Positions 28,568-55,908 of a stretch of DNA of 64,000 nt are shown here, in pieces. The stretch is from Octopus bimaculoides (lineage: Eukaryota), in assembly GCF_001194135.2 (NCBI RefSeq), contig NC_068991.1:6029834-6093833 (forward strand), written 5' to 3'. A program made the translations under genes and the position numbers. Under the pieces are notes generated by a model that worked only from the letters and a program-made list of their open reading frames with translations, had not been told where the DNA came from and searched no databases. Position 1 is the first letter of the stretch. Every line of letters starts with the position of its first letter.

Positions 28568-29879
28568 GTAAAAACATTTACTTCAAGAAATTTATAACTT
28601 TAAGCTGTAACACTCTTAATTATTTCTCAGTTTACATTCTGCAGATCAGCTTTTCTCATTTTTGCAACTCACAAGCATGTGTGCACTTTGTGCACATATT
28701 TCTCTCATTTTAGTTTCTTTAACATTTATAGACAATAATTTCATCTCTCTCTCTTTCTCTTATGAAATCTGTATTTACAAAAATTATGCAAAAATTGTCC
28801 CCATTATTACTATCATTATTGTTAATATTTAGAATTTAAGTAGAGAATGCTAACAGTAAAATGTTAATGTTTAAAATGTATTTACTATAATTAGGACATT
28901 TTGTAGTTGTATTGTTTAGTATATTATTTAACTAATTTAAAGTGTCCCCATGGTTTTAAAATTTAGCATTAATGAATGTTTTTCAATTAGAATCTTAAAA
29001 GAAAATGGGTGGATTTTTCTGCCTTTAATTTTGTATTATTCCGGTTTTGAAACAAACTTCATTTTCTGAACACAAATCAGATTTTTAAAAAATTCATTTT
29101 TTTTCTTTTCTCGTTTTTATTTTTAAATTGTATTTATTGTTCCCTGTGGCTTTTTAAAGAAAAGATAAAATAATTTGAACTTATTGCATCTCTACATTAA
29201 ATATAGTTGGACTATGAAGTGGTCTAAATACCATGGTTTTAAATATTTGTTTCCTAAATATGTTCTAAAAGCAAATTATCTTGTTTTATTCTTCTGTAGA
29301 AATGCACTTCACATCAGCTGCATGTGAAAAATGCGCAGAACTCTTTTCAAAAGACTTAGATATTCAAGGTTCTATAATTCTATAAAACTTATGTTAAAAG
29401 ATTCTTCAGTGGCTTGGTAATGCTACAGAAAGTTTTCATTGATACAATACAAACTAACATTTCTGTAAAAACAACAGAAAGTAACCAATAAGTTGATAAA
29501 TAATTCAGTTTTCTAAATTCCTGATAATATTTAATTATTGTAAAGCTAAAGAACAAGGTGAGCTGGCAGAATGGTTAGCACTCTGGACCAAATGTTTTGC
29601 GGCCTTTCTTCTGGCTTTACTTTCTGAGGTCAACTTAGCCTTTCATCTTTATGGGGTCAGTAAAATAAGTACCAGTTGTGGACTGGGGTCAGTTTAATCA
29701 ACTAACCCCTTCTCCCAAAATTTCAGGCTTTGTACCTGTTGTAGAAAGAATTGTAAGTGAATAGAACTTAAATTCAAGAGAACAGAGGCAGGAATGTGCC
29801 TTGAGAGATATGATTTTTTTCTCAAAAATTACTAGGAAGAAGTTGATGCTATGGAAGTCAAGAATCACTGTAGAGCTAA

Positions 29880-31560
29880 GCCAAGAAACGAAAGCCATTA
29901 TTAAAGTGGTTCCAAGAAATCATCTTATAAGAAGATAAATATTAAGAAAGCGAAAATTAATTTGAACAAAAGCAATAGAGATTGCTGAGGAATGCTAATG
30001 GACAAAAGCAATGGAAGATATTAAGGAATTTGAAAAAAGTGAATAGGGAGTTCTAACATGCCATAAAAAAGATAGACAATTATTTGAAGAAAGAATGTAA
30101 AAGTGCAGGAGAAAATCAGCAGAAAAGAAGCATTTACCCCTAAATATAATAAGAAATTTCTAGAAAGTTAGAGGCCTAGAATCAGTTTTCTACAGGATAA
30201 AAATGGGCAACATATTGATGAAAGAAGTACTATTAAAAAAGCACGATAGTTTATATAGAAGAAGACTTGTAAGATACACAAACTCTGTATAGAATAGATT
30301 TGGTTAAAAAGAGATGATGAGTGATGGTTAGAAGAATATTGAGCTTTATTTGATAACCAGTTGATCTTGGAAGCAGGGCCTCATATCAGTGAGGAGGGCC
30401 GGTGTGCATCAATGCCGTCGAGAGGTAGGCTCTGAAATGGCGCGCATTCTGTCCTGATGACCTCATACACTTACTGGCTTCCAGTATGCGGAGCCCTTGA
30501 CTGGTAGCACTTGCATGTGCAGGTTGTTTGTAAAACATATATACTAAAAGAGCTTGAGAAGTACCAAACATAATGGAAGCAGAACTAAGTTTGGCAGTTT
30601 TTGAAGTAGTGAAAGAAAAGAAGTACCATTGAACTGTAGGGAAACAGTTGATGAAGACACCTTTAAATTGCTTATAGAACAAAATTTGCAATTAGTTGAA
30701 TAATTTATTAAGCCCTATGAAAGTGGCTGAAAGAAATGGGTGTACCTAAACATTATAGTCTTTCAAATATGAAACCTTTATTGAGAACAAGAAGTTACAG
30801 TAAGGACAAATATTGGGATGCCATATAATTTATGGTCAAGGAGTGAGACAAGTTTGCATATTTTCCTTGTACTTTTTAATGTGTATAGAGAAAAATATGT
30901 GGTAAGCAGGGTCAGGTGAGATAAGTGGGGGGGGGGGTGTAAAATAGCAGTCAACAATCTGAGATAAGCGGATGACACAACATCGTTGATAGAAGTGCAA
31001 AGGTGAATTGGAATTAAAAGAAGCAAAGAAAAAAATTTCAGATTTAAATTTAAAAGAATTTAAGATGGAAGTAGTGGCTCATTTATTTTTACTTGGATGC
31101 AAGATTGAAAGAAGTGGGGAATGTCTGACTGAAAGTGAAAGGACAATAGCCTCATGGGAAGGCTGCATTGATAGGACTAGAGAAGATTATCAAAGACAAA
31201 AGCACATCATAAATAACAGTGGGAAGACTGTCTGATGTCTCTGGATACGAATTAATAAGCAAGGTAGATGGAAAATTAATGCGTTTGAAATATGGTGCTG
31301 AAGACTACTGAGAATGTCATGGACAAAAAGAACAAACAGATCAGTACCACTGAAAGTGAAGGAAGCAGTGATTGTCAAAGATTAAAATTCCTTGGTCATG
31401 TATGAATCAATGGTGGATGACATCAGAGAAGCATTATGTCAGAACTGAAGATTCAAAAGGAGAAAGACAATTGCACATGGGTGGATAGATGGGGGTGAAA
31501 GAAGTAAGGCAACATTCTTGAATCAGCTCAGAATGTTTATGAGAAGGAGGTAGAATTAGA
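29880..31560 (+). mobile_element. Decayed RTE-clade LINE (reverse transcriptase region)
   Basis: GVRQVCIFS (~30840), VNNLR*ADDTT (~30950-30982, YADD with a stop), FLLGCKIERSGEC, AFEIWC*RLLRMSW: the RTE motif order. Confidence 0.85.
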
Positions 31561-34500
31561 GATGGCAGTTATTAGTGCTTGTTTTAACCAAAATATTGTA
31601 GTTACCAGCTTTAAATGTAAAGAGCAACAAGAAAACCATTAAGCTGGTGCTTCAAAACAAAATTCTATTGTAATGTCTGCTCTGATTTGGTTACAAGACA
31701 AACTTCATTGGAAATGTATTACCAAAAATATCATCATTAATTAAAATGTGTTATAAAATTTAAAAAACAACCAATTATGTATTAAAAAACAAAAAACAAA
31801 TAGTTTGACATTGTTCCATCCATCTTAGCATTTAAATATTTAATCATATTGGTTAAAATTTGCTGGAAAAAAACAAAAATTCCATTTGGTTTTATAAAAA
31901 GTGTAATAAGTTTTGAAGTTGACTTGGCTTTCATATCCACAGGATTATCGAAATGTACCAATAAATTTTTTTTTAACCTGTTAAATTGAATTAGGTACAC
32001 CTTACTTCTACAAAAATTGGTCTTGTGCTCTACATAAAACATTTGATATTAGTTTAAACCAAACTATCTTTTATATTGCTTGGTTTTTAATTTTGCAACA
32101 GTCTATAAAAATTTAACTGTTTAAAAAAAATTATATAAGGTATGAAATAACTATAGAGTGTGATAGGCTGTGTTTTTCCAAATCACACCGTTGGGCTTCT
32201 TCTTATATAAATGACATAATGATTGGTTAATTAACTGATAAAAAGATAAAATAATATTATGTATATTTTTTTCTTAAAAAACATATTCTAAAACAAGTCA
32301 TCTTGTTTAATTCTTCTATAGATAAAATCAATTGTCTATCAGTTTCATATAAGTTAAAACAGACAATTATAACTTGGATAAATCATTGTGCAATTTAGGC
32401 AGAAAATGTTTATCTTAGGCTCACCTATATGTGCAAGCTGGAGCACAGTGTTTTTGTGGAAGACTTGGTGCTTTCCGTGCATTTAAATTTGTGTCTGTCT
32501 GTGTGTGTCTCTCTCTCTCTCTCTCTGGAAAGGGTGGCACTTCAGGGATGATATTATTTGTTATTGCAAGGGTTGCAAAGGGCCAGGACAGATATTGTTA
32601 GAATTTTTTTTGTCTGATGCTATAATAGTACTGCCAACCCACCAACTTGTTTTGACACTTATTTAATTGACCTTGAAATAAATGATCAACAGTAAATATG
32701 ACTCCAGCAGGATTTCAACACAGCACAGAGTTGAAACAAATACCACAAATCATTCTAGCCAATATTTTTCCCTCCCCCAACACCATCATTTAACGTCCAT
32801 GGCTTGGGCCATTTGACAGGGTCCAGTGTGTCCAAGGACAGTGTCACGCCTCAATGTTTACTCTGGCATGGCTTTTAAAGCTGGATATCCATCCTTACAC
32901 CAACCACTTTACAGCAAGTACCGGTTGCTTTTCTCGTGGTACATGCACTATTGGGGCCTCTGTGCAGTTGGCAGGACTTGGAACTCTGGGGGGAGTGGTG
33001 GGGACAAGGGGACCACTATGAGGGATGAGAGACAGAGCAGGCACCTGTTGAGCGTACTCTACTGCATGGATACTCACATTGTGTGTGTGTGTAAAATAAA
33101 ACAAAAGGAATAGAGGTGGTGCTGTTGCATTTATTTATTTATAATAGATGCAAGAGAGCCATTTTTATTTTCTTTGATTTGTTTTATTTTATATTCTGCA
33201 ATGACTGCTCTATTCTGTAAATCAGTACATTACCTGGATTTTCAATTTTTTTAAATACAATTCCTTGTAACATTTAATTAAAAATGCAATGGGATTTTTT
33301 GAAACATTGAATCGCTGCAGGGGCCTAGTAGAGTGAAATAGGGACCAGAAGGGCCCATAAGTAAAAAATGGTTGAGGGCCACTGGTTTAAAACATCAATT
33401 ACCATTCAGTTCATTTAGAGATTGGGCAAAAATGAAGAACAAACAAGATAACTTGTTTCAAATCAAATACACATTAATATTCAAAAATTATGTTTAGTAC
33501 ATTTAAAGTTTGTTACAAGTAACTACCGTCTTCCTTTCATATTTTGAATTTAAAGTATATATCCCATCATGCTCTTGCCTTCAGTTTTCAAACCCTTTGA
33601 AAACCTAACCCTGACACGTTTTTTATTTTTAATATTAAAGCTTTTAGTTTTGTTAATCTTAACAAGTTAAAATTTTCTTTATAGCAATTGTCAGTTGTCA
33701 TAGTAACTAAATAATAAAATATGAGTTTATATAGAGCTGGGTACTGGCTGAGCACTTTTATTCATTCTGGTAGCCAGTATTTTGTTTTCAATTATATTTT
33801 GGTTAGTTAGAGTAGGTATCATTATGAATTTTTGAAAATATTTAAATGTAATTTCTACTGTGCTTTTAAGAAACATTTTGATGCCTCATTTGTGAAATTT
33901 GAATAAATATTTTAGGAAATATGACAACTTGAATGGTCAGTGAAATGGTCAAGATTTTGCCTAACTTGCGTAAATGAATAAGTAGCTATATTTGTGATGT
34001 CATAACTTCGAAACTGAGGTGTTAATCAGTTTCAAATTACACAAATTAATAGTGACCATGGTATAGTAAGTTGCTTAATTTTTTTTCAGTTTCTTGGAAA
34101 GAAAACTTTTTTTTTCCCCGACAATATTTGAAATATGTAAAACCTATTTTGTTACATGTAACAAATGGTTGGTTTTTGCAGTGTTTTCATTCCTAGCTAA
34201 ATCTAAAACTACAAACCTTAGAAACTTGAGCTTTGGCACCTTTGTAGTAAGTTTGGAGGTAAATAAATCATGAGATTTTGGGACATGGCAGCATTTCTAT
34301 AAAATTTTAATTCGACCATTAAAAATGACTATAAATAGTGGAATTTCGGATCAGGATGCCCACATAAGTTGCATTTTCTTAGTTTTGACAGGGATTTTCC
34401 CCATTTTTTTCTCACCATGGCCTTGGAAATGAAGAGGGGGAAGCTTCTTATGAAAAAAAAAAAAAGATAATTAAATGAAATTACAGCTATTGCAAGCATT

Positions 34501-37500
34501 TCATATGCTTATATTGTGATCTGTTATCTGCAGGGGGCTCAGTTTTGATACACTGGTACAGGGTATAAAACTGAATCTTCTCCAAGTTTGGAGCTTTACA
34601 ATAAATTTAATAAGTATCCTTGGAGAGTTCTGTGGAGGGGGTGATACACACACAATTTGACCACACAAAAACCCTTTTTTTTTGGTACATCATTTTCATG
34701 ATAAAATACCAATTTTCTTTGGGAAATTATATATCATTTGAAAGTACTGGATGTGAACTTTGTTCTCATATAGTTTTAATCCAAATCTGACATTTACCCA
34801 AGATGTCAGGGTCCCTCAAACACCCTGGTGTTTCCACCCATTCACAAAGTTTATCCCATATTTTTTTTTTTTTTTTGACTGCTGAATGCTAGCTCTCGAT
34901 CTAGTTCAATGCTCTTGAGCACTATAGCTCAAGTTGTGTTAATAATCGTATATGCAGGTAGAGGATATTTTAATATTTATTTTTATATAAATCTTGGTGA
35001 TAGGTCAAATAATCGTTACGAAATATAAAAGTGAAAATCACATACTGCATTCACTAGTGAAAATGTAAACAGTGTGACAAAAATATCTGACTATATTTAA
35101 ACCGTGGGAAAAAAGTTTTAAAAATCACATAGCCTACAAAATAATATTCATTGTACAATATAATTTTTATTGATGAAAATATAGACCAATATTTCTTTAA
35201 GAAATACAAAATTCGAAGAATATGCGCAAGGTAAAAATTCATTGGTCACTTAGTACAAAGTGATAGGGAATAAACAGTATTATCAATATGATGATTACAT
35301 GCTAATTTTGGACTCTAGAGGCCCTATTTAACTCAATTTAGTGCGAATTCTTGTAGAAATATGTTTACTTAGCAATTAATTTGTTCATTTCTTGAAATTC
35401 TGGATCAAAATTGATATTTGAATCCTTGAATTCATCTTCCTCTTGCTAATTCTTGTCAAATATATGATATTTTAAATTAAAAATCTGAAGTTAGATAACT
35501 TTTGAAATTCAAAAACATCTTCAACAGAAGTAAATTTTTGGCATTCAAAATTGTTTCATTAGCAAATAAATATTTATGTCACACTAAATATTCTCATTCC
35601 TGTTTGTGGTTTAATGGTTGAATTTTGTTGGTTGTATTTGTGAGTTTACAAGACTCCTCAGTAGCTAAGTGCATTCAAAATACAATTCTGTCAGTAATTT
35701 TTAAACTGTTTGATTTAAATATTTTAAAGTAATGAATACATCATATCTCTGCTGTACATTAATTTCTTAATAAAACCTGTTCTAAGAACAATACTTTCTC
35801 TGTCAGGGAATTAGTAACAGCAAAAAACTTTTTCTTGGTTTTCCCTAAGCATTTGATATTGAAGTAATTCAGAATACTTTGTCAGATTCACTAAAGTAAA
35901 AATATAAATTTTAATCGTTAGATCACTGTAAACAACCAGTAATTGTAGTATTTGTTTGACAATTCTGAAGTTTTAAATTCATAAAAAGCTGGGTTAATGA
36001 TGTCTATTTTAAGATTGTATTTCTACCTTGGCAAACAAATGTTACTTCATTCTTAATACTGAGTAATTATCAGACTCTGTATTTAAGAAAAGTTTAATCT
36101 TAATTAAGGAATTTGGTTAAGAGGATGTCAAAGGTTTTGCTGATATGAATAATAATAATAATAATAATCTGGGTTTAGTTATAAAATGTTTTATGTGAGG
36201 TATACATGTCCATCACTTTTTCTTTATTTTTATATATTTTAAAGTAGTTTGTATAATGAAGTACTTCCTATTGTGGAAATATAACAAAGTTGAATGTATG
36301 AGCAAAATGCGGCCCCTTAACTTGTCTAGTGGGGCTGTAACTGCAAATAACTAGTTCAGTCCTGTCCAACTGTTGCCCAACCTGGAAAGCACACATAAAA
36401 TTCTGGTGATGATGCTCTTTCATCTCACTCATCTCCTCTCAAAATGTGTTTCTAAGGCTGCAGGTATTGTTAATTAAGCGTAATTGCATGTTGCACTTAC
36501 TTACAAACAAATAAAGTAATATAGTAGAGCTAAAAAAATTAATTAAAGTAATGTAGTAGAGCTAAATGACATGGTTTCATTCTTGTTCCCCCCCCCCTCA
36601 AATTCTTGGAAATGCTGAAGACTAAATACAGTATTTAGTTGCATCTCTTCTTGTTGTGAGTTTAACTTTGCCTATCATATTTCCTGTGCCTGTAAAATGA
36701 ATAGCAAGGTCAATGAAAAACTGGCTACACACTCTCCTCCCAACTTTTGCTAGACTCTACAAGAATCTAAAATCAATAGTGGCTTTTTATTATTAAAAAT
36801 ATTAATGATGTATAAATTATTAATTTGTGCGCACATCTGTTTGTTAGTGTGTATGTATAGTTGTGTCGTCTGTCTGATTTGGTGTATACCTCTGACATAT
36901 AACTGAAATACAGTTCACATATCCTCTCCTCCTTTAAAATTCTCTGGAATTTTCTCCTAGTCACAAGTTTCTTGCAGTTGTCAATCAGATCCTCAGAAAC
37001 TTAAATTGGTTATCATCTGTGTTTGCCTTGTTTGAGAAACCCTACAATGGTCGGGGCTACTGTCCCTCTCACTTCTTTGTTTAATAAAAAAAATGTATGT
37101 GTGTAGATATAGATTAATAGATAACTAGATGCACATTTTCTAGTTATTTGAACAGCTCTTCCATTATTCATAGTTAAAAATCAAGCTAACTTAACCTTGA
37201 AATCGTTTCATTCTACCATTGTCTTCATGACTTTTTCAATCTTAATATAATGCTGCAATGCTACAGACAAATCTTTCATAAGAAATCTATTAACATGGAA
37301 ATTCTAAGTTTCTTTTTCATTGCTTTTATATAAAATTTCAAATTGCTTAAACAGAAATGTTTTCATAAATAAAAGTTATGAGGAATATAAAATGAAATAA
37401 AATGAAATAAAATTGAAAATACGTCAAAAACTAAACTTAAAATATAAAACTTAATTAAAATTCAGGTTTAAAAGAAAAAATCTTTATATTGTAATTTGAA

Positions 37501-37732
37501 TTAATTTGAATTCTCCTGTTATTGAATTTTGGTTTATCTTTAAATCTTAATATTTTATTTTCTAAAGTCTTATAAATATGAAAAAAGATTTGAAGTGTTC
37601 ATCTATGGCAAATATATTTATTGTGAGTGTTATACTTATGTAACATAACAGTATTGACTAGATGATGGTGCAACTAATGAGTTAAGCATTTTGTCAGACT
37701 GGTTTCAGTCCCTACTTTGTGCAGTTTCTTAA

Positions 37733-37953
37733 CCCTTTAGCATTCCGATTACTCTGTCAAATGTAACATATAACATTCGCAATGATTTGAATTAATCATG
37801 CATTATCTTGTAGCTTTGAGATTTCTATGGTGTGGTCGCTTATGTTTTGAATGATATTGTTAGATAGATGTGGGAGGCCATATCTGGTTGGTTTGAACAT
37901 AAAAACAAGTAGAAAAATTTGGGCTGGATATGTCTGGTTTAAATGCTAAAGGG
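37733..37953. mobile_element. piggyBac-type MITE
   Basis: TIRs CCCTTTAGCATT / AATGCTAAAGGG flanked by TTAA on both sides. Confidence 0.85.
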
Positions 37954-38149
37954 TTAAGCACTTGGGTTGTTAATGTCATTGGATAAGGCCAGAATGTCAG
38001 AATTATTTTATTGTTGAACTCTGTAGGACACTTCAACCATACTTAGGCATATAACAGGCTGAAATAAAAGCAAAAATACAGATATTTAGTGTTATATGAA
38101 TACGAGATAAATGTAAATAAAAAAGTATAGGATGTGTGTGTTTCATCAG

Positions 38150-39600
38150 TCACAACCATCATCCGTTTACGTCAGTTTTTCCATGCTCTCATGGGTTGAA
38201 TGAGTATTCTCTAATGCCTTGTTCCATTCTCGTCTTTTTCATGAAGTTTACTATCCTCAGATTGATCTTCATCACTTCCTATGTCTCCCTCTTCCGTAAA
38301 TGTCTTCTACTTGGGGCTACTTGGCACTTCTTTACTCAGCTATCATCCTCATCTGTGCCATACATCTATATTGACATAGTCTTTCTTGCACACTACAGCC
38401 AATTCCACTTCTATCCAGTTCTTCTCTTAGCGCATTTATGATCATTTACACTCAAATTTACATTTAAATTTCGAACCATTCAATTAACACTAAATTTAAA
38501 TTCTTCGTTAACACTAAAATTATGCCCTCAGTGGAAGATATTAACTTCATTCTTTCTAGCCCTTTGCACATCCTTTGCATTCAGTGCTTGTGTTTTGCTC
38601 CTGTGCTATATTGCACTTTGCATACAAATATCAAACAATCTGTTCTTCACCCAAAGAGAGAAGTCCCTAGTTTATAACTCCTTGAACCTTTCCCACGGTT
38701 CTTATTTCATTCTCATTCTAGCTACTCTGCCATCAGAACATTCACCTCCACTACTGATTATGTCACATATATTAGTAGAAGCTATCAATTACTTCTATGG
38801 AACCTTCTGGGTATTTGAAACAATTTATTTCAGAGGTCACTTTCTGCTAACTATTCACATGCATATACGACATAAGCCACACCTGCTTGTGATTTTATTC
38901 CACCTGTGCAGCTATTGTTTACATTCAGCACACAGTATGGAATCATTATCAATTCCATTTCAGCATATTGAGCTGGGCCACTTCCCAGATAGCAATTAGA
39001 GTCTTGTCATTTCGGTGAAGGGAAACTTTTGTCTTGTCTGCTAAGTTTAAAGTTTTTTGATTCTTCATTTTGTTTCCAGACTTGTCTCTTAATTTTTATG
39101 GCTTCATCATTCCATTACCATGTTGCCTTCCAGCTGATTAACACCTTGCTCCACCTATGACTTGCTGCAGGCTCAAACCCCTATTTCCTCTATTTCCTCT
39201 TCATCGCGTGCCACCTAGTACTTCTCTGAGTCTGTCTCACTCTTATTCTGAAGCTACTGATCCTGGTCTATGCCGTGTGTTCATTCTTTAATGAAAGAGG
39301 TTTAAGTGTTTACAATCACTTGTTTGTCTTATTTCCTGCTCAATATGAAGTTTATCTGACTCGTGCTCGCCAGATTAAGAGCTGACAAAGTGGCTGAAGT
39401 AAGTGGCAAAATTGTGCCACACAATTCCAGGAAGCTTACTTCATCTCCATTCTTTGTTACATATCCCTAAGCTTCATGTACATTAGAGTAGCAATCTTGA
39501 TGTTACCAACATGTCTGTTGAGGTCACCAGTTATAGTAACTAGATTCTCAAATAAATAGGGCTTCAATCGTGAGACATCCTTAGGCTACTGGTGAAGTGA
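38150..39600 (-). mobile_element. Decayed, internally deleted RTE-clade LINE
   Basis: Endonuclease motif VTITGDLNRHVG at ~39540-39505. Its 3' end at ~38155 has the same tail as the SINEs. Confidence 0.75.
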
Positions 39601-39904
39601 AGGATGAGCTTACGAAAATCCTGAAAAAGAAAAGAAAAAAAAAAGCTAAAAATCATAAAAATTATTTAAAAGTAACGATAAAATAAATTACTGTAAAGGA
39701 TTTTATATGTTTGACCATAACAATTGCAATGTAACAATGCACCAATGGCAGGTGTTGGTCACCGACTATTGTATTATAAAGAGTTTTGATTGCATTGCTT
39801 TATAAATAATAGCAACCAATGAGTCGTAAGTATTCATGAATGAATGCATTTAATACTTTGGGAGTAAAACACCAATCTAAGCTATTAGCACAATTTAACT
39901 TGAT

Positions 39905-40166
39905 AACCTTAGACAAATCACCTGCTGGAAATAACAGCCAAACCCCTATCATTTTATACCATGCCCAGATTATTGTCAAATGTAAAGCTTATTTATTGTT
40001 TTGAATTAATCCTGCATTATCTCCTAGTGTTGAGATTATGATGATGTGATTGCATATTTTTAGAATGACATAGTAGGGTAGGCGTGAGAGGCCAGATACG
40101 GCCAGTTTGAACATAAAACCAGGTAGAATATTTGGGCTAGATATGGCTGGTTTAAATGCTAAAGGG
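39905..40166. mobile_element. piggyBac-type MITE, left end degenerate
   Basis: Body matches 37733-37953; right end AATGCTAAAGGG-TTAA. Confidence 0.8.
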
Positions 40167-40319
40167 TTAAAAAATACTTATGGAATGGCACATTGGATGT
40201 TTAGTTCTAGATGACCTGTCTGCAAAAAAAAAAAAAAAAAAAAAAACCCTGTTCACAGAATGGTAATGATTATAAGGCTGCTCATTCAGGTTTGATCTGG
40301 GACTACACAACAATCATAA

Positions 40320-40521
40320 TCTGGCCATATCCAGCCCAAATATTCTACCTGTTTTATGTTCAAACTAGCCAGATCCAGCCTTTCACACCTACTCTACAAA
40401 GTCATTGTAAAAATAAACGATCACATTGAAATCTTGAAGCTACGAGATAATGCATGATTAATTCAAGACAGTTTTAATAAATAAGCTTTACATTTGACAA
40501 AGTAATCTGAATGCTAAAGGG
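40320..40521. mobile_element. piggyBac-type MITE in opposite orientation
   Basis: Reverse complement of the same MITE body; ends AATGCTAAAGGG-TTAA at 40521-40525. Confidence 0.8.
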
Positions 40522-40589
40522 TTAAATTAAATCTTTGTTGTATTTTATAAGATTTGTATGATCATTTTTTTCATAAACTTTAGATTAAA

Positions 40590-43050
40590 TCATCATCATC
40601 ATCGTTTAACGTCCGTTTTCCATGCTGGCATGGGTTGGACAGTTCGACACAAATTAGTGTGGTTGTCAGAAATTCATCTAAACTCTTTGTATCACATGAG
40701 TGCCAGAGGATTAGAGGGAGACACTTTGTAGTCTCTTTATCTAAGCTTTTCTTCTGCAAGGTTTTTTTCACTAGTTCAGCTATGAGGGCTCTGTATTTGG
40801 TATGCAGAAGTTCCCATGGATAGCTGTCTTAAACCCCTCTGATATGGGCTAGATGATTGTAATAATCAAGAAGAGACATTCCCTGCCTTTGTACTGTAAC
40901 CATGCTTTCAACTGCTACAATAACGACTGGCCTGTTTGTTGGGTCTATTTAGGGCAGGCTCTCTCTTTTCTATGCATCTTTTGTTTCAGCATTAGTGAAG
41001 GCAAGTACATCACAGTAGTTCCATACACATTTCTCTTGAACAAAGGCTTAATTCTTTCTGGTACACTGCTTTGCAACCCAGAGCATTTTATGCCTCTGAT
41101 CCGCATTGTAGAACCTGCAAACCTCTTACTTTTGGCTTCTCCTCTTGTTATGTCTACTTCGTCTTCTAGTAAACAGATACTGGTTTTTCTCTCATTTTTT
41201 TTTCTTCCAGTCTTTCCAACCTCTTAATTTTTATGGCTCTATTGATTCACACTGTTCCTCATGCCTAGCTTGAACCTTGCACCAGGCACAGACCTGGGCT
41301 GTTGCTCGAAACAGGTCTCTAAAAATTCCCTGTTGTCTTCCATCTCCTCTTTTTGCCAGTCATATACACCAGCCAATCAAAAAGTACTTCCGCTTCTATA
41401 GTTTCCTTCACCAGATTGTCTGTCTTGCTCTTTTTGTATCTTGAGGGTTGCTGATCACCAGTCAATATTGTGTGACTCATTATTCTCCAAGGCAAGCCAT
41501 AGTATTCACAGCCAGTTGCATATCTTGTTTCCTGATGAATATGTGGTCTATTTTGGTTTGCATGTTTGCCTTAGTTGCAGACAATCAAATGGTCGGTCAC
41601 GTTCTTGAAGTTAGTGTTGCAAATAGTTAGGTCATTTGCATCACAGCAAATGGAGCTTTTATTCTTCTCTGTCCCTTACCATATCCATAGCCTGCATGTA
41701 CATAGAAGAAGCATGTTTAATAAGGACAACAGTCATGATAACAAAGTTGCTTTCATTTGTCAGTGAAATAGTCTGCAAGTGGGCCTTATAAAAAACCGTC
41801 CATTCATTCACCTGTCACCCTTCATTGTAGTTCACACGCAGAGACGTCACCCTCATGTTGTTTGTGACAAAGCTTAATTATTCTATCGCACACACTGATA
41901 AACCTCAGCCACCTTATCTGTCAATAATTTGCCTACTCCCACTCACTCCTCGTTGGTACCCACCCAAGAGAATATGCAACTCTGTTCCTTGTCGTGAAGA
42001 GTCTAGTTCAGCTTTGGCTTCATCTTGCTTGTTGTACAGATCATAATTGGCTCTGCTCCAGCCCCTCTATAATCTCTTATACATATAAACTTTTGTTGTG
42101 CTTATGTAAACAGTGACAGTGAAAGAGGTGAGGACTTTCTCTTGGAAGGTGAATAAATGATTTGATGTTTGTCTTCTGCGTCTCGAAAATAGAGAGTGTG
42201 TGTGTGGTTGTTTTGTTGGTGGCCAGTGGGTTCTCGTATGACCAGTTGTTTTCATGTACTAAATTATTTGTACAGCCGATCACTGATTACCTTTGGATCT
42301 GGAGAAGTGGGGGCATGCACATAAACACATGCACACACTGCAGTAGTAGTAGTAGTAGTAGTAGTGTGTTAAGAGGGGTGTTTACTGAATACCACACGTG
42401 GTAGCAATTGGAGATCAGGACTATATTCTTGATACTAGTAGCTAAGGGGATGCATCATGTATGATTCACGATACACTTTTATGGGATTGGAGGTGTGTAT
42501 GGGGGGGACAGGTTGCTGAGAAAGAAACATTTCCCCCCACCTCTTGGCAGTATGTAGATGTAAAATCTGCTTTCTCTTGATGGAATCTTTTTGCAAAACA
42601 CCAGACACAATGAAAGTATATAAAATCAACAAATATAATTTGTTTGTTTATGTAAAAAAAAAAAAAAAAAATCAATCTCCCTGTTCATTGAGGGGTTTCT
42701 GTCTTTTGAAGGTAGTGGCCTATAGAGCCACTCCTTAACTCGCTTTATGGTATCTTGAGAAACTACATAAGACTCGCAACCATTGGTTTCAACGGCTGCT
42801 TCATTCAGCATATGCATTCCTTCAGGTCCAAAGGACAAGGAAAACTCCATTTCCTTATCCTGTCTTAGCTGGAGGATTCAGGATGAAGGAAATGAGCTGG
42901 AACATTATTATCAAGGCTCTTCCTTTTAAAAACGAGCCTTATACATGAGCGAAAAATGACAATCAGCCGTATTTAGAAGGCACCACTGTCTTACCCATTC
43001 AGTATCGTTGCATCTCAATGGTCAAACATGTTTTTGCATTTGTGAAACTT
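40590..43050 (-). mobile_element. Decayed RTE-like LINE, possibly several nested fragments
   Basis: RTE-type tail at 40590-40640. Degenerate ORF-like similarity at 41000-41450 and 42000-42290; boundaries approximate. Confidence 0.5.
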
Positions 43051-43559
43051 TTAGCAATGCAGATCTGTCAGGTTCTTAGTAACAAATATTCCACCTTTAT
43101 GACAGTATTTTCTGTATACTTTTATCTTTTGTTTGTATGCTTAACCTGTGTGTGTATGTGTGTGTTATTCTTGTAGGCGTATATATATATGTTTAAGCAT
43201 ATGTGGTGTATTTATGTTGTCTACCAATCTAGATTCATAGATTCAAAACACAGCATACACTGTAGGGAATGTCCTTCATCTTTCGGCTTACCGTTACAGT
43301 GACTACCAATAGCACCATATTCTTTGATGTTGCTGAGTAATAATGCCACACATTGCGCACGCTTTTCTCTTCCTTCTTATCAGTGAAACCAAGGGAGCTA
43401 AAATCACTCTAACTGTACATTGACTATACCATTTGCTAACGGTGGTTTGCCTTCACTTTTTTTCACATACCTCCACCCTACCTATGGCACACACAAGCTC
43501 ATGTGCTATTCTCTCAACCAAAATTCCTGCTATGAATGCATCCATATAAGCTTCATTCT

Positions 43560-43772
43560 TTAACTCTAGCATTCAGATTATTCTATCAAATGTGATGCTC
43601 ATTTATTCAAATTATTTTCAAGTAATCACACATTATCCAAGTAGCCTTGAGATTTTAATGATGTGATTGTTTATTTTTAAAATGACATTGTAGGCTAAGT
43701 GTAAGTGGCCAGTTTGTGCATAAAACAGGGAGAATATTTGGGTCAGATATGGCTGGTTTGAATACTAAAAGG
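43560..43772. mobile_element. piggyBac-type MITE, diverged
   Basis: Same body, degenerate TIRs. Confidence 0.75.
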
Positions 43773-44399
43773 TTAAATCTATGCGATAAAATTTTTTTTC
43801 TTTTACATGTTTCATCCCCAAGGCTGTGGCCATGTTAGGACACCATATAATTTTTGTTTGGAAAAGTTTTTGATCTTGGTAGAATTATTTAGGATATGTA
43901 TATTTGAATAATTCTTGTAAGGTTCTAAATGTTGGTAAGGATTAGCATGTTACTTCTGAAGATAGTTTTGTTTATCGCTGGCATTTCATATTGTATACTT
44001 GCTGAAAGATACGGGATGTGGTCATTTGTCATTATCTTATATTCTAAAATGGTTCAAAGCTTGTAGGTTATGGAATTAAGCTGATAATGGCATTTGTAAT
44101 ATAGTATGCACGAGCACTGCTATAAAAACTAGTGGCAGCTTAAAAAGCTTAAATGATGTTGCACAGCATCTGATAAAAGCTTGTTAATATTAGTTGGGAA
44201 TATCATATGAAAATAAAGAATGTTTTAGAAATCTTGTTGGATGCAACTTTTCATTTGTTATGGAGAGAATTAGGGGAAAGTGGATTATAGAAGTGAAGTA
44301 TACAGTTTAAGAACATAAATTGCTGATCCGTGTTGAAAAATCAAACGTTCTGTATCTGGTTTGAAATCATGCTGCATAGCTTTTTCCTAATTATATGGT

Positions 44400-44776
44400 G
44401 CAGGAATAGCTGTGTAGTTTAAAAGTTTCCTCTCCAACCTCACGGTTTAGGGTTCAGTCCCACTGCATGGCACCTTGAGCAAGTGTCTTCTACTATAGCC
44501 TTGGGCCGACCATGATCTTTTGAGTGGACTCAGTAGATGGAATTTGAAAGTAGCCTATCGTGTGTGTGTTTTTATGTCTCCTTGTCTTTGCATCACAATG
44601 GTTGTAAGCGAGTGTCACCATCATACAAGCAGTGTCTTTCATTTCCATTCTTTTGTGCAAACATGTCTGGCTGTGAGGAACAGTAAGGGCATCTGGTTGT
44701 AGAAAATCTGCCTCAGTGAATTCCATCTGACCCATGCAGGCATGGAAAAGTGGGCATTAAAATAATGATAACGATG
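44400..44776 (+). mobile_element. Near full-length tRNA-derived SINE with RTE-like tail
   Basis: tRNA-like head with GGTTCAGTCCC B-box, core, and tail GGGCATTAAAATAATGAT. Another copy follows at ~44930-45340. Confidence 0.8.
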
Positions 44777-46391
44777 TCCTTTCTATGCTAACAGAATCTT
44801 TTAACAAACTTAGTTAAATGAATGTTTGAAATGAGCTTGAGAGGATAATTTTAATTCAAATGCAATCATGTTAAATTTCTAAGAATTGAGTCAACTTCAT
44901 AAATTCATGTTTAAACCAAATCTGATGCCCAACATGGTTGTGTGGTTAAGAAGTTTGCTTCATAACCACATAGTTGTAGGTTCCGTCACAGAGCACAGCA
45001 CCTTGGGCAAATGAGTTCTACCGTAACCTTGAGCTGACCAATGCCTTGTGAGTGAAATTTGATTGGCAGAAACTATATGGAAGTCCATCATGTGAGTGTG
45101 TGTGAATGTTTCTGCACATCTTCACATTGTTATCGTGTGAGCAAAAATGGTGATGGTGTTTATATCTGATAAATAACACATCCCATAGCTTGGCAACGTT
45201 GTAGCCTGCACAGACCAGTGGAGCAAAATTATCTTGAAAAAGAAGTAAAGGTTGGAAACAAGAAGGATGTTTTGTTCTATAGAACTCTCTCTCAGGAACC
45301 CCTGTCCAATTCCTGTAAAAAGTGGGCATAAAAATGCTGTTGCTGATATTAATAATGTCATTTGATGGGTTATGATATTTTTAATATAAACCATAAAATG
45401 AAAGGGTTTTTATTTTTGCTCTTTATTTCTTCATACTCATGTTTGAGTGTTATGCTTTAATCAACTTTAACTGTGGAATGATATCAAAACCATAATCAAC
45501 AAAATATATCGAAACATTATTATGAATTTATGCGTCAAAACAGAAATGAGAAAATTTATAAAATTGGAATTTCCATGGTCTTGCTAATTGAAAATAAGAT
45601 AGCAGTACATAGCATCTGAATATATTGTAATTTAACCGAATAAAAAAATTAATCATACACATGTTTAATGCAATGTATAAGTTAATAAATAATTTCACTA
45701 ATTGCTAAAATATATCTCCTAAAATACACACAAATCATAATAAAACTCAATATAAATGGCTTTTAAAATATATGTTGTTAGATTTCATATTATATTATTT
45801 CCTCTATGTTGTTTAGAATTTAATATCACATAATCATTAAAAAATTTTTATATTGTAGGAAAATAATTCTTAAAATTCTGAAGTGAAAATAAAGTTAATT
45901 AGGAAGAACTATTTTGTCAAATGCAAATCTTAAACAGATTTAGGTGTATATGTATTATGTTTAGTATTGAAAAAAAAAAAGAATTTAATGCCCATTTGAT
46001 ATAAAATAGTCTTTAAGGTTTTCAGTAAGTTCCTTTCACCGCTTTTATTTATTTATTTTTTTTTGCTTGCTTCATTAAAAAAAATTTTTACTTTTTAAAT
46101 TTAGCTTTTAAAAAACTGTGCTTCTGAAATATTAATAACTATAAAAACATTGGGAGTAAACGAAAGTCAAGATGTCATTTATGTAGTAAGAGTTTGCTCT
46201 TTATGACAAGTTGCTTGTGTTAATTGAAGCTTTAAAACAAATATCATTTCATTCCCAAAGCAATTTTGTTATGCATTTTATTTAAGAATAAACCATAAGA
46301 GTGAGTGGGTGGATGGGCGAATAGGTTGTGCTTTTCAGTAGCAATTAATAACTGAAAACTTACAAACTGCGTTAAAATCGTGATTTTCCAG

Positions 46392-46448
46392 CTGTTTCCT
46401 GCCTTAACCGTTATGACTTGCCGCTACTGGATCAAGGACTTGGAACAG
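46392..46448 (+). CDS. 57-nt symmetric (phase 1-1) exon encoding AVSCLNRYDLPLLDQGLGT, a paralog of the end of the first coding exon
   Basis: TTTTCCAG| acceptor, ACAG|GTAAAT donor, open in the required frame. 12 of 14 residues identical to NRYELPLLDQGIGT, with mainly synonymous nucleotide changes. Confidence 0.8.
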
Positions 46449-46916
46449 GTAAATAATCCTCCTTACTGCCAGTTACACTGTGCTCACTTAGTTTTTCCCC
46501 TTCCCCACATTGTCCCGTGCCTGAGAACTTGCAATTAAGTGACAACATTTCTCTCACAATCTTTGCAATCAAAATTAATTTCAACATTGGTTGTTATTTG
46601 GTGAGAGCAGCAGTTTCTCTGGTTGTAGCTCTATGTTAATTTCATCTTGTTTTTTTTTCCAATTGTGGATGCTTTTTAAGGGTTAATTTTTTTTTTTACC
46701 CCTGCTAGTAATGCAATTTTCTTTTCATATCATTACCCTTTTCTATTTTTCTGTTTTTATATCTTATTTGGTAGTTACAATTCCTCCATGTTCTAATTGT
46801 TTTTGTGCCTGTATTATTATTTTTTCCCTGAAAATATTTCTCAGCTGTTTTTATAAGTTTTTGTTCATTGCTCTGCTTGCAAATTAGTTGTTGCTGATTG
46901 CTGCTTAGTTTTGTTG

Positions 46917-46961
<45 letters not shown>

Positions 46962-52000: not shown

Positions 52001-52038
<38 letters not shown>

Positions 52039-52469: not shown

Positions 52470-52525
<56 letters not shown>

Positions 52526-52812: not shown

Positions 52813-55800
52813 GTCTAGGGGCATTGTCCCCATCTCTCTCCCCACATACATCTCTACCACCAGCTCGTGGTCTTGGGGGCATTCCTCAAGTAAACTATGG
52901 CCATCCATTACACAATTCAGTCACTCAGTTTTTGGATAGTATGAATCTACAATCATCTTTCCCTAGCCAATCACATTATAAACCGGTTCCCACCTCTTTT
53001 CCTTTTGATTCAGCTCCTCGGTCATCGGCAGAACAACCAACCTGTTACAGCTCGGGGAGGTACGTAACCTCCTCTCACAGTGGAGTTCCTGCTCACAGTA
53101 AATCTCTCTTTAATCAAGATTTTCATTCAAGCAAAGATTTAGCCAGCAGTCTCACCCCATCTCCTATGTCACCTAATCCTCATGTTCCTGAAGCAAGTAG
53201 CAAAAGCTGGAGTCTGTCTAATTTTGTTCCAACTTCATCAAATCCCTTTGCAAATCTCACTAATGAGCTCTCTGGACCAGGAAATTATGCGCCAGCATCT
53301 CCTAGTCCCCAACAACACATTCCTCCCCCAGCTCACAGCACCAACAGAGCAATCAGTAGTCTTTCTCAAAGAAGCCCCTACCAGCCAGACCCTATCTACT
53401 GTTCAACTTCTCTACCTAGTAGTAAGTCGGTTCCATCTCCACAGTTACCGCCAGTCTATAGCCGCACCACTTCACAATCAACAAAACCGGCCCACTCGCC
53501 ACAGTTGCCTTCTTCATACAATATGTCCAACATGAATCATGAGCAACAACAACCTGCTACACCTCTCTCTCAACCTCCAACACCAAGACCATCAAATTAT
53601 TCTTCCCCCCAGGACTTGGAAAATATGTCTGGCTCGCAGTCACCCATGTATGATCCCTACAGCTGCATCAGTACTAAAAGTTATTCTGTAGCATCTAGTG
53701 CTCCCACTTATTCTTCTGTAAATCATATGACATCCGAGATGGGCTATGATCCTGTTAGTCCAACTCAACCACTCTCTGAACAACCATCTCAACAGCATCA
53801 ACAGGGGGATTCTTTCTGTACAGTCTCTTTGCAAGATTTGGCTTCAATTGGATCTAGTCAAGACCGCATGCAAGATATGAAAAATCGAGAAAGTGTGTTG
53901 CTTCAAGAAACCTCTCATATCATGCTGCACAGTACTGCCAATAAGGGAGTCTCTCCTTCACTTTCTGATCTGCAGCAGACTGTCCAGAGTATCACCTCAC
54001 GCCCTCAGACTATTCCAGCAGCACACAACATGCATAATGGCCAACTTTCTCAAAGTGTTCACAGTCCCATGCAGCAATCACCTATAAGTGTGGGGAGTCC
54101 GCAGGCTCCAATAGCACTTGGAAGCCCGCAGACTCCTCTTCCCAGTTCCACTATAGTGCAAGCACCTCCTCCAGTTCAAGCTGTTGCTGACTCAACAACT
54201 AAACCCAAACGTGGACGTGGACGCAAGAAGAAAGACATAATTTATGACAAAGCTCTTGAACTTGGACAAGAACATTTATTTAATGAAGAACCCCTAAATA
54301 TGACGCAAGGAACAGCCAATGTATTCCCCAACATGGCACAAGTGATGTCTCAACAGTGCCATGATACCCTTCCTCCACAACCATTAACTGAAGATACCCT
54401 GAGCCCCACTTACCAAGACCATGTTGAAGAACAGCGACTCAAAGTTCAAAACGTTAGTCCTGTTTTAGACCCTTCTTTATCTGTTGTTCGCCTAAATGAC
54501 CACCACCAGGATGCATCTCCTGCAAGTATGCATCAGTTTTCAGTACGAGGTAATGTTGAGAGCTCTCAGCATGGATCTGATCATGTGACAAACATGCATC
54601 CCCCATCAGTATCTGGTAGTATTGGTAGTCCACAAGGAGTTTTATCTGAGGATATGCCCAGTACTGCTACACCTCTTTCTGATCGTATTGAACAGCCAGC
54701 TGCCATTACTGACCAATACTCAGATAGTTTAACTCCACCCACAACAACGCCAGATCTACCAGATATTCAGAACTATGGTATGAGGCGCTTGACTGAATCA
54801 TCTTATGTTAATACGATGGCATCCCAACTTGGCCCCAACCAGATGAATTTGCACCAGCAGGATCCAATGTGCCAAGACAGTATGACTCTTTCTAAGCAGA
54901 ATGCATCTTTGCAAATGCAACCTCCCCCATCCTACATGAACTTCTCTCAGGTATCAACGCCAAAAGATTTGGTACCTGCTTCAAACAGTTTTGAAGATTT
55001 AGCTATGGATAAAGATGGTGATGCACCAGAATTTGATGATTTAGTTGATGCCAACACTGCTGATACGAAGCGACAGTTGCTCTCTCAAGAAGATGAGACC
55101 ATTGGAGCAGCTATGGCTACTATTTCTGCTGACTTCTCTTTGTCTGATAAAAAGCAAAAGAGAAGTCGTACTAAAGCAGAACAAAAACAAATGCCTACCA
55201 ATGTAATAGCTGTTACACTCCAGGCTGAGTTTGATGAGGAATTCCAACACTTGCAAGATAAAGTTATGCTTGATGGTGAACTGCTGAAAAAAACGGAGAA
55301 TAAATCCAAAAAGTGTTTTGATGCTTTCCAAGAAAGCTATATAAATTTCTTACAAGGTAAAAAAACAGAGACACTCTCCAGCCTGAGTTATTCTAATATT
55401 ACTAGACGCACCCATTCTACGAAATATGATCCAAGGTTTTATAATTCTATATTAAATAATTTGCCAGTTGGTGATTTTGGAACTGGGTATAAAAGACCTC
55501 TTACTACTACAACAGATTTGGGCAGTTCTAAATTGAATGATACACTGAGCATGAATCAGTCTTCGACCCCATTTTCTGATGAGGAGAACAGTATTAATAC
55601 AGTTGAAGATTTATTTCAGAATCTTTGTGATAACTTTGAATCTGACAATCAGATGCATAGACAGTCAGTAGAGTTTGGACGGGGTCCTCGTCGTGGGCGG
55701 GGAGGCCGTGGCAGTAGAGGTCCCCGTGCAAAACGAGCACGTGGTAGGAGCCGAACTTTCTCTGGTGAAAGAGAAGTTATGGAGTTCTTTGATAAAGGAA

Positions 55801-55908
55801 CATCAGAAAACGATGTTGAGAAACCCATTGTACCTGTGTTACCTTTAAGGCAAACTTCTTCTCGTAAGGCAAAAGAAAAAACCCTCACACGAAGAAAGCG
55901 CAAAAATG
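52813..55908 (+). CDS. 3096-nt internal coding exon, S/P/Q-rich probable chromatin protein (QSER1/PRR12-like, tentative)
   Basis: 1032-codon open frame. Polypyrimidine acceptor TTTTCTTTGTAG| at 52812 and donor AATG|GTAAGT at 55909, both phase 1. KPKRGRGRKKK at 54201-54233, FQESYINFLQGKK at ~55327-55365, RG-rich patch at ~55675-55755. Exon call is strong; family assignment is from recalled resemblance only (about 0.45). Confidence 0.93.

What the first reader, a model, noticed from the sequence alone, without database searches (positions are those of the whole stretch)
46392..46448. A duplicated short exon, 18 kb downstream, repeats a peptide motif under apparent purifying selection
Seen: 46405-46453 aligns ungapped to 28524-28572 (TTAACCGTTATGA...GATCAAGGA...GGAACAG|GTAAA), including the donor. 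Of 7 substitutions, 4 are synonymous (CTG/TTG, CCA/CCG, CTT/CTA, TTG/CTG) and the rest give conservative E/D and I/L changes. The copy has its own short-tract acceptor, is 57 nt and phase 1-1, so inclusion or skipping keeps the frame. Inference: an old partial exon duplication lets the protein carry one or two copies of an NRY[DE]LPLLDQG[IL]GT linear motif, i.e. splicing-controlled valency of a docking motif in a disordered protein. I do not recognise the motif.
Basis: partly seen in the sequence, partly recalled or inferred. Interest (0 to 1): 0.75.

Follow-up and report, generated by a model that had tools for sequence, protein, structure and literature searches.

The report
Duplicated cassette exon doubles a motif
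A 57-base exon in an octopus chromatin-protein gene is an old partial copy of the preceding exon; including or skipping it gives the protein two or one copies of an ancient short motif, and both forms are already in public gene annotations, so it is a tidy example of a known mechanism.

Summary
Window 28523-28572 and 46404-46453 align without gaps at 43/50, including the GTAAA donor, far above chance. The gene is Octopus bimaculoides LOC106877154, a QSER1/PRR12-like protein with DUF4211 and an AT-hook. Exon B (46392-46448, 57 nt, phase 1-1) is a real exon. RefSeq XP_014781450.1 contains its peptide AVSCLNRYDLPLLDQGLGT at the predicted junctions. An intronless transcript from a deeply diverged cephalopod also carries it, at 55/57 nt and 18/19 aa identity. 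Isoform pairs differing by exactly these 19 residues are annotated in O. bimaculoides, O. sinensis and O. vulgaris, so it is an alternative cassette exon. All non-cephalopod spiralians checked have a single motif copy, so the duplication is cephalopod-specific and older than the deepest split sampled. Exon B is the most conserved stretch of the alignment even at synonymous sites (17/18 codons identical against 49% in the large exon). Constraint therefore also acts on the RNA, and a simple dN/dS reading is not valid. The N-terminus is predicted disordered, which fits a linear motif, but the partner and any tissue regulation are untested. The kind of event is known, the instance is undescribed, and interest is moderate to low.

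The parts
28391..28567 (+). Exon A, the first coding exon of LOC106877154 (QSER1/PRR12-like). It carries a 5'UTR tail, the start codon at 28438 in a caccATGG context, and 43 codons plus 1 base. It ends in phase 1.
   Evidence: Its translation MDPNHWSNYNQPYSRINHNSTMPSAHSSINRYELPLLDQGIGT equals the N-terminus of P0001 / XP_014781450.1. The same exon end is seen in other molluscs, whose short gene models run into the intron right after the motif.
28523..28572 (+). Source copy of the duplicated block. It covers motif copy 1 (INRYELPLLDQGIGT, 28523-28567) plus the donor GTAAA (28568-28572).
   Evidence: 43/50 ungapped identity to 46404-46453.
28568..46391 (+). Intron between exon A and exon B (17.8 kb). 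Together with 46449-52812 it forms the single ancestral phase-1 intron that is spliced out in the skipping isoform.
   Evidence: Splice junctions inferred from protein isoforms with and without the 19 residues.
46392..46448 (+). Exon B, a 57-nt phase 1-1 cassette exon encoding (A)VSCLNRYDLPLLDQGLGT, which is motif copy 2. It has a weak acceptor (gattttccag) and a GTAAAT donor.
   Evidence: It is included in XP_014781450.1, XP_052827457.1, O. sinensis X1/X3, O. vulgaris CAI9730707.1 and A0A0L8GFL2. It is skipped in O. sinensis X2, O. vulgaris CAI9730706.1/708.1 and A0A0L8GFS9. The orthologue in Logan transcript L001 is 55/57 nt identical.
46404..46453 (+). Duplicated block within and just past exon B: 45 exonic bases plus the donor GTAAA. 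The first 12 bases of exon B (46392-46403) show no significant similarity to exon A.
52813..55908 (+). Exon C, a large exon (3096 nt, enters in phase 1) with a strong polypyrimidine acceptor. It encodes the S/P/Q-rich disordered body with an AT-hook (KPKRGRGRKKK) and is the acceptor for both exon A (skipping) and exon B (inclusion).
   Evidence: identical to P0001 residues 63-1094.

Best explanation
Exon B is a real, cephalopod-specific alternative cassette exon of the Octopus bimaculoides QSER1/PRR12-like gene LOC106877154.

Origin. At least 50 bp comprising the 3' end of the first coding exon and its donor site were copied into the downstream phase-1 intron. A weak acceptor 12 nt upstream of the copied block made it a 57-nt, frame-neutral exon.

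Effect. The first coding exon holds the start codon and is always used, so the splicing choice is B in or B out. Skipping gives the ancestral protein with one copy of the spiralian N-terminal motif (L/I)NRY(D/E)LP(L/I)LDQG. Inclusion gives two copies 19 residues apart in a disordered N-terminus.

Shown: the duplication, the exon's use at these junctions, annotated isoforms of both kinds in three species, deep conservation, single copy outside cephalopods, and predicted disorder.

Inferred: the motif is a short linear binding motif, so that inclusion changes avidity or stoichiometry for an unknown, probably nuclear, partner; and the unusually strong synonymous-site conservation reflects splicing-regulatory sequence in a weakly defined alternative exon.
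For: - Duplication.
- Gene identity: 100% match to XP_014781450.1, Pfam PF13926/DUF4211; relatives are named 'glutamine and serine-rich protein 1-like'.
- Exon B peptide at the predicted junctions in RefSeq models.
- Isoform pairs differing by exactly 19 aa in O. sinensis, O. bimaculoides and O. vulgaris.
- An intronless 5.5-kb Logan transcript contig from another cephalopod carries both copies.
- Orthologue conservation of exon B is 55/57 nt and 18/19 aa. Four-fold sites are 10/11 identical against 148/361 in exon C (Fisher p = 0.0011). Synonymous codons are 17/18 identical against 377/764 (p = 1.2e-4). Of the 10 19-codon windows (of 869) with at least 55/57 identical bases, nine overlap exon B (starts 36-44, including the two best at 56/57) and one lies at codon 897.
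- Paralogue-specific states (E vs D, I vs L twice) are shared by both lineages. B-B differ at 2 sites, A-A at 5 and A-B at 8-11, so the duplication predates their split and there has been no later gene conversion.
- A single copy is found in Haliotis, Mizuhopecten, Lottia, Potamilus, Sinanodonta, Babylonia, Nucella, Batillaria, Solemya and Biomphalaria, in the nemertean Lineus, and in an unidentified spiralian genomic contig whose 1.5-kb intron has no B copy.
- AlphaFold2 on the N-terminal alignment gives mean pLDDT 52 and no secondary structure around the motif.
- The acceptor is weak compared with exon C.
Against: - No RNA-seq junction counts could be examined. Evidence for skipping rests on annotated isoforms, not reads; that the NCBI pipeline and the original O. 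bimaculoides annotation base isoforms on transcript evidence is my own knowledge.
- The newest O. bimaculoides RefSeq model lists only the inclusion form.
- Both contigs from the distant cephalopod (P0003, P0028) are inclusion forms, so alternative use is documented only in Octopus.
- No binding partner or known motif class could be assigned.
- Because synonymous sites are also frozen, peptide-level selection on copy 2 cannot be isolated.
- The distant cephalopod could not be named, so the age in years is not fixed. Nautilus was not sampled.
Confidence: 0.72

Rival explanations
1. The exon is real, but there is no regulated switch. One isoform (probably inclusion) is the functional default, and the other is low-level splicing noise that annotation pipelines happened to record.
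For: The current O. bimaculoides RefSeq entry XP_052827457.1 and both transcript contigs of the distant cephalopod carry only the inclusion form. A weak acceptor would be expected to give some accidental skipping.
Against: Skipping isoforms were annotated independently in three species by three different pipelines. Skipping recreates the ancestral protein, which is functional in all other spiralians. Extreme synonymous conservation is a known hallmark of regulated alternative exons rather than constitutive ones (my own knowledge; data).
Confidence: 0.2
2. Exon B is conserved mainly for an RNA-level function, and the second peptide copy is a tolerated by-product. Candidate functions are a splicing-regulatory element, a substrate for cephalopod A-to-I editing, or another structured element.
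For: Synonymous sites in exon B are almost invariant between lineages whose neutral sites are near saturation. The cores AACCGTTATGA and TGGATCAAGGA are identical in all four A and B sequences.
Against: - No unusual local fold was found (z = +0.74).
- No exon-intron duplex within +/-3 kb beats shuffled controls.
- The exon has stayed frame-preserving.
- Its peptide NRYDLPLLDQ equals the form in Solemya (NRYDLPLL) and nearly that in Lineus (NRYDLGLLDQ), the likely ancestral state, even more closely than copy A does. That is hard to explain without selection on the peptide.
- The two explanations are not exclusive.
Confidence: 0.12
3. The similarity is a chance match, a pseudo-exon, or a recent duplication or gene-conversion tract with no history of selection.
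For: Only 50 nt are similar, and the within-genome 4:3 synonymous/non-synonymous count is not significant by itself.
Against: Chance is excluded. The exon is in RefSeq proteins and in a spliced transcript of a distant species. Paralogue-specific differences are shared across lineages, which excludes recent duplication or conversion.
Confidence: 0.01

Closest known systems
QSER1 / PRR12 family (DUF4211, PF13926) of nuclear, largely disordered AT-hook proteins
   Same: The host protein has the precomputed PF13926 domain. Relatives are named 'glutamine and serine-rich protein 1-like' or 'DUF4211 domain-containing'. It has an AT-hook (KPKRGRGRKKK) and a long S/P/Q-rich region in exon C. The literature describes the AT-hooks and DUF4211 as the conserved parts of PRR12 and QSER1 (PMC11050278).
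   Different: The N-terminal MDPNHW...NRYDLPLLDQ region was detected only in spiralian members; a profile search of 1.84 billion representatives gave 25 hits and no vertebrate-like N-termini. Its duplication into a cassette exon is restricted to cephalopods. No function has been shown for the mollusc protein.
Alternative splicing derived from tandem exon duplication (e.g. Martinez-Gomez et al. 2021, PMC8373072; Kondrashov & Koonin 2001 and Letunic et al. 2002, from my own knowledge)
   Same: A duplicated exon sequence in the adjacent intron has become an alternatively used exon that is conserved over a very long time.
   Different: The classical cases duplicate whole exons and are mutually exclusive substitutions. 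Here only the 3' end of an exon plus its donor was copied, the source exon is constitutive because it holds the ATG, and the copy is an additive cassette. The outcome is one versus two copies, not A versus B.
Splicing-controlled repeat number in a disordered protein, e.g. MAPT (tau) exon 10 giving 3 or 4 microtubule-binding repeats (my own knowledge)
   Same: A frame-neutral cassette exon that is itself a paralogue of neighbouring coding sequence adds one more copy of a binding repeat, changing valency.
   Different: Tau's repeats have a known ligand and known regulation. Here the ligand, the regulation and the consequence are unknown, and the unit is a 15-residue motif rather than a 31-residue repeat.
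Short linear motifs switched by alternative splicing of disordered segments (e.g. Colak et al. 2013, PMC3635989; Buljan et al. 2012 and Weatheritt & Gibson 2012, from my own knowledge)
   Same: A short conserved island lies in a predicted disordered region and is encoded on a small, symmetric, conserved alternative exon.
   Different: The usual case toggles the presence or absence of a motif. Here the constitutive copy always remains, so the exon changes copy number.

Membership tests
QSER1/PRR12-like (DUF4211) protein family | C-terminal DUF4211 domain (PF13926) | tested here: met
   PF13926 is precomputed on P0001 (100% identical to the window's exons) and on most of the other proteins listed; relatives are named QSER1-like. 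The domain itself is encoded beyond the window.
QSER1/PRR12-like (DUF4211) protein family | AT-hook(s) and a long low-complexity disordered body | tested here: met
   KPKRGRGRKKK and a second RGR-rich stretch sit in exon C. There are no Pfam hits over its 1036 aa.
QSER1/PRR12-like (DUF4211) protein family | Orthology to vertebrate QSER1 or PRR12 specifically | not tested
   The third homologue search returned no vertebrate sequences. Only source names of mollusc relatives support the link.
Alternative cassette exon | Canonical AG...GT boundaries and a length divisible by 3 with symmetric phase | tested here: met
   AG at 46390-46391, GT at 46449-46450, 57 nt, phase 1-1. Both splice products are open.
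Alternative cassette exon | Both inclusion and skipping products observed | tested here: met
   Annotated isoform pairs differ by exactly the 19 residues in O. sinensis, O. bimaculoides and O. vulgaris. This is annotation-level evidence; raw junction reads were not available.
Alternative cassette exon | Tissue- or stage-regulated inclusion | not testable with these tools
   There is no access to RNA-seq read alignments.
Alternative cassette exon | Conservation of the exon, including synonymous sites, across species | tested here: met
   55/57 nt identical. 17/18 synonymous codons identical against 49% in exon C, p = 1.2e-4.
Tandem-exon-duplication, mutually exclusive exon pair | Two homologous neighbouring exons of similar length | tested here: not met
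   Only 45 exonic nt of the 177-nt exon A (130 nt coding) are homologous to exon B.
Tandem-exon-duplication, mutually exclusive exon pair | Exactly one of the two exons in each transcript | tested here: not met
   Isoforms are A+B or A alone. Exon A carries the start codon.
Short linear motif (SLiM) in a disordered region | Short conserved island within a region lacking stable structure | tested here: met
   P35 and L37 are invariant, and the [FL]P[LI]L core is conserved across molluscs and near-identical in a nemertean. AF2 mean pLDDT is 52 with no secondary structure at the motif.
Short linear motif (SLiM) in a disordered region | A defined binding partner or modification enzyme | not testable with these tools
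   Recalled motif classes (LxxLL, DxxLL, PxDLS, SUMO-interaction-like psi-x-psi-psi with flanking acids) were considered from memory only. None fits across species except loosely the last, and none was tested.

The most novel reading that the evidence does not exclude
The cephalopod lineage remodelled its QSER1/PRR12-like chromatin regulator by two internal duplications, each coupled to alternative splicing. One is the N-terminal motif described here. The other is a downstream module of about 85 aa, 'FIIExKD...YPxWKIE...', seen. Under this reading, exon B is a tissue-regulated (for example neural) switch that converts a monovalent ancestral docking motif into a bivalent one. Its frozen synonymous sites would then mark a dedicated splicing-regulatory or RNA-editing element.
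Probability: 0.2. Interest if true: 0.5.

Novelty: new member of a known kind. Interest (0 to 1): 0.3.

Why it matters
This is a clean, datable example of how a partial exon duplication can become a frame-neutral cassette exon that changes the copy number of a conserved linear motif, rather than switching it on or off. The host is the invertebrate counterpart of QSER1 and PRR12. The literature ties QSER1 to maintaining a poised chromatin state in development and PRR12 haploinsufficiency to a human neuro-ocular syndrome (PMC11050278). The N-terminal region of the spiralian proteins has not been characterised in anything I found. The finding marks a 15-residue motif as a likely interaction site and supplies natural 1x and 2x variants to test it. 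It is also a caution for dN/dS on short alternative exons, because here synonymous sites are as constrained as the peptide. It does not challenge any existing concept, and the exon and both isoforms are already in public annotation.

Tried and rejected
- A second homologue search with only the N-terminal 146 aa gave no scored hits, and a third with the DUF4211 region gave only two unnamed fragments. I therefore could not add more cephalopods or check vertebrate N-termini.
- Octopus genomic DNA from a second species could not be fetched. The O. sinensis gene range of 136 kb is too long, and the other isoforms are not on record. Flanking-intron conservation is therefore untested.
- The genomic contig of a second distant cephalopod (L002, 88% identical in protein to the transcript species) has no exon B within the 10 kb upstream of exon C that could be fetched. 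This is uninformative, since the intron may simply be longer.
- Local RNA folding of exon B +/- flanks (z = +0.74) and a duplex scan of exon B against +/-3 kb of intron (no better than shuffles) gave no support for a structured or editing-type dsRNA element.
- The profile hits P0030 and P0033, with 10-11 matched stretches, are translated satellite-like repeats and not relatives.
- A possible extension of homology into the first 12 nt of exon B (AGT-TCC-ATT vs GTT-TCC-TGC-CTT with a 3-nt indel) is not statistically supportable, so I dropped it.
- Motif classes recalled from memory (nuclear-receptor box, GGA DxxLL, CtBP PxDLS, clathrin box) do not fit the residues conserved across species.
- Literature searches found no description of this exon or of QSER1-like genes in cephalopods.

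Full report
**1. Observation**

The two stretches are in the window as described. 28523-28572 (TTAACCGTTATGAACTGCCACTTTTGGATCAAGGAATCGGAACAG|GTAAA) aligns without gaps to 46404-46453 (TTAACCGTTATGACTTGCCGCTACTGGATCAAGGACTTGGAACAG|GTAAA) at 43/50.

- A pattern of the shared bases occurs exactly twice in the window and never in 100 shuffles.
- The gapped local alignment returns the same 50-nt block, with score 65 against 19 +/- 2.3 for shuffles.
- blastn gives E = 1e-9, and neither copy belongs to a dispersed repeat.
- The boundaries 46392-46448 are flanked by AG and GT. The exon is 57 nt and phase 1-1. Both the inclusion and the skipping products are open reading frames.

**2. What gene this is**

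The spliced product of exon A (ATG at 28438 in a caccATGG context, ending at 28567), exon B and the 3.1-kb exon C (52813-55908) is 100% identical over 1094 residues to XP_014781450.1. That entry is 'uncharacterized protein LOC106877154' of Octopus bimaculoides. It carries Pfam PF13926 (DUF4211), and its mollusc relatives are named 'glutamine and serine-rich protein 1-like' or 'DUF4211 domain-containing protein'.

Exon C encodes an S/P/Q-rich body with an AT-hook and has no Pfam hit of its own. The gene is therefore the octopus member of the QSER1/PRR12 family. In that family, AT-hooks and DUF4211 are the recognised conserved parts (PMC11050278). The next exon lies beyond the window.

**3. Exon B is a real exon and is alternatively used**

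The 90%-identity cluster of this protein contains isoforms with and without precisely these 19 residues.

| Species | Includes exon B | Skips exon B |
|---|---|---|
| O. sinensis | X1 XP_029642576.1 (1668 aa), X3 | X2 XP_029642578.1 (1649 aa) |
| O. bimaculoides | A0A0L8GFL2 (1095 aa), XP_014781450.1, XP_052827457.1 | A0A0L8GFS9 (1076 aa) |
| O. vulgaris | CAI9730707.1 | CAI9730706.1, CAI9730708.1 |

Three annotation efforts therefore recorded both forms. From my own knowledge, these pipelines create alternative isoforms from transcript evidence. I could not inspect reads. The short pyrimidine tract of exon B's acceptor, next to the long tract of exon C, fits a weakly defined cassette exon.

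**4. Age and direction of the duplication**

A 5.5-kb intronless contig assembled from run SRR24189500 (L001) encodes the full orthologue of another cephalopod and has both copies...INRYELPILDQGIGT AVSCLNRYDLPLLDQGLGS GLGALSPS....

That species is deeply diverged. Aligned protein identity is 79%, and only 148/361 four-fold sites in exon C are identical, which is close to saturation. A genomic contig of a second species of the same clade is 88% identical to it in protein. Neither species could be named.

The copies sort by paralogue, not by species:

| Comparison | Differences (of 45 nt) |
|---|---|
| B vs B (between species) | 2 |
| A vs A (between species) | 5 |
| A vs B | 8-11 |

The E/D and I/L differences between A and B are the same in both lineages. 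The duplication therefore predates the split, and there has been no later gene conversion.

Outside cephalopods there is one copy only. This holds for Haliotis (INRLDFPLLDQA), Mizuhopecten (LNRFDLPLLNAD), Solemya (NRYDLPLLAA), Lottia, Patella, Potamilus, Sinanodonta, Babylonia, Nucella, Batillaria and Biomphalaria, and for the nemertean Lineus longissimus (LNRYDLGLLDQSGIGT). An unidentified spiralian genomic contig has exon A and exon C separated by a 1.5-kb intron with no B copy.

Short gene models of several molluscs run into the intron immediately after the motif. The phase-1 intron that received the copy is therefore ancient. Copy B (NRYDLPLLDQ) matches the Solemya and Lineus form, the likely ancestral state, more exactly than copy A, which carries D->E.

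**5. Selection**

The within-genome 4:3 count does not by itself demonstrate purifying selection. The orthologue comparison is much stronger, but it changes the picture.

| Measure | Exon B | Exon C | Fisher p |
|---|---|---|---|
| Nucleotide identity | 55/57 | 2241/3009 | - |
| Amino-acid identity | 18/19 | 786/1003 | - |
| Four-fold sites identical | 10/11 | 148/361 (41%) | 0.0011 |
| Synonymous codons identical | 17/18 | 377/764 (49%) | 1.2e-4 |

Of the 10 19-codon windows (out of 869) with at least 55/57 identical bases, nine overlap exon B (starts 36-44, including the two best at 56/57) and one lies at codon 897. The cores AACCGTTATGA and TGGATCAAGGA are identical in all four A and B sequences.

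Selection therefore acts on the nucleotide sequence as well as on the peptide. From my own knowledge, that is typical of conserved alternative exons, where exonic splicing enhancers and silencers are constrained. In cephalopods it could also reflect RNA-editing substrates. I found no unusual local fold and no exon-intron duplex beyond shuffled controls within +/-3 kb. The splicing-code explanation is therefore the more economical, but it is untested.

**6. What the motif is**

A profile of the N-terminal ~129 positions was searched against 1.84 billion representative proteins. It found 25 proteins. Those that could be placed are spiralian QSER1/PRR12-like N-termini or fragments of them, and only the octopus protein matched in two stretches. 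The two multi-repeat hits are translated satellite-like sequence.

Within the motif, P35 and L37 are invariant in the mollusc alignment. AlphaFold2 with that alignment gives mean pLDDT 52 and no secondary structure around the motif. This is consistent with a conserved island in a disordered tail, that is, a short linear motif. I could not assign it to a known motif class, and the resemblances I recalled do not hold across species.

**7. Mechanism, with what is shown and what is inferred**

Shown:
- A partial exon duplication (3' end plus donor) landed in the downstream intron.
- It is spliced as a frame-neutral cassette.
- Its inclusion yields two motif copies 19 residues apart, and its skipping yields the ancestral single-copy protein.
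- It has been retained essentially unchanged across the deepest cephalopod divergence I could sample.

Inferred:
- The motif binds a partner, so that inclusion changes avidity or stoichiometry.
- Inclusion is regulated.
- The frozen synonymous sites are splicing-regulatory.

**8. Comparison with known things**

This differs from the classical tandem-exon-duplication class, in which whole exons are used in a mutually exclusive way (PMC8373072). Here only part of an exon was copied, and the source exon is constitutive. The closest functional analogy is splicing-controlled repeat number such as tau exon 10 (my own knowledge). It also fits the general pattern of linear motifs on small symmetric alternative exons in disordered regions (PMC3635989). 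No held paper describes this exon or cephalopod QSER1-like genes.

**9. Verdict**

The functional reading (docking-motif valency) is plausible but untested. The exon and both isoforms are already in public annotation. What is new is the recognition that the cassette is a partial duplicate of the preceding exon, and that it doubles an ancient spiralian motif under nucleotide-level constraint. It is a new member of a known kind, of moderate to low interest (0.3).

Noticed in passing
Outside the window (exons beyond 64 kb); proteins P0001 residues ~1190-1275 and ~1355-1440, P0003, P0019, P0022, P0023, P0018: Cephalopod orthologues carry two copies of an ~85-aa module (FIIExKD..NY..YPxWKIE..G....YEL..EDGKIRHRAVPTY...) upstream of DUF4211. 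Every other spiralian checked has one. O. sinensis isoform X3 and O. vulgaris CAI9730706.1 lack the core (46 aa) of the first copy. This is a second cephalopod-specific internal duplication in the same gene, again with alternative isoforms.
   Followed up: partly
Proteins P0001 / P0020 versus P0023, just after '...SADSAENYD' (downstream of the window): The two O. bimaculoides RefSeq models diverge from each other and from O. sinensis and O. vulgaris at this point (WQHEEWDLQKLN... and SYLNQMLKFVLK... versus SDKDPAWTPFAMEKK...). The conserved SDKDPAWTPF exon is probably mis-modelled or missing in the O. bimaculoides assemblies.
   Followed up: no
window 55909-55925 and Logan protein P0027: A Logan contig product (P0027) reads through the exon C donor (AAAAATG|GTAAGT) into the intron (…RKRKNGKSDF…), as does the window ORF ending at 55925. 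This is either an unspliced or intron-retaining RNA, or genomic reads in that run.
   Followed up: no
window 28391-28437 versus L001 ~152-216: The 5'UTR part of exon A (GCATTGCTAGACCTGCTGGTGCTGCTGTTGGCTGGT...) is recognisably conserved in the distant cephalopod transcript (GCACTGCAAGACCTGCTGCTGCTGTTGCCACTGGCTGGT...), up to the caccATGG start context. The upstream UTR exon of L001 has no convincing match in the window.
   Followed up: partly
window 12404-12413, 18716-18798, 19972-20751, 52609-52618, 62571-62612: There are assembly gaps (runs of N, the largest 780 bases). One lies only ~200 bases upstream of the exon C acceptor. The introns are rich in microsatellite-like (TA/CA)n tracts, which produce the many spurious repetitive ORFs in the ORF list.
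   Followed up: no
P0030 and P0033 (from the profile search, not in the window): Two proteins matched the motif-region profile in 10-11 tandem stretches (FPLMAVDDAAIWSGLGSGECLSSHSWLS...). They look like translated satellite repeats and are not relatives. This is a reminder that the G/L/S-rich segment after the motif attracts low-complexity hits.
   Followed up: yes
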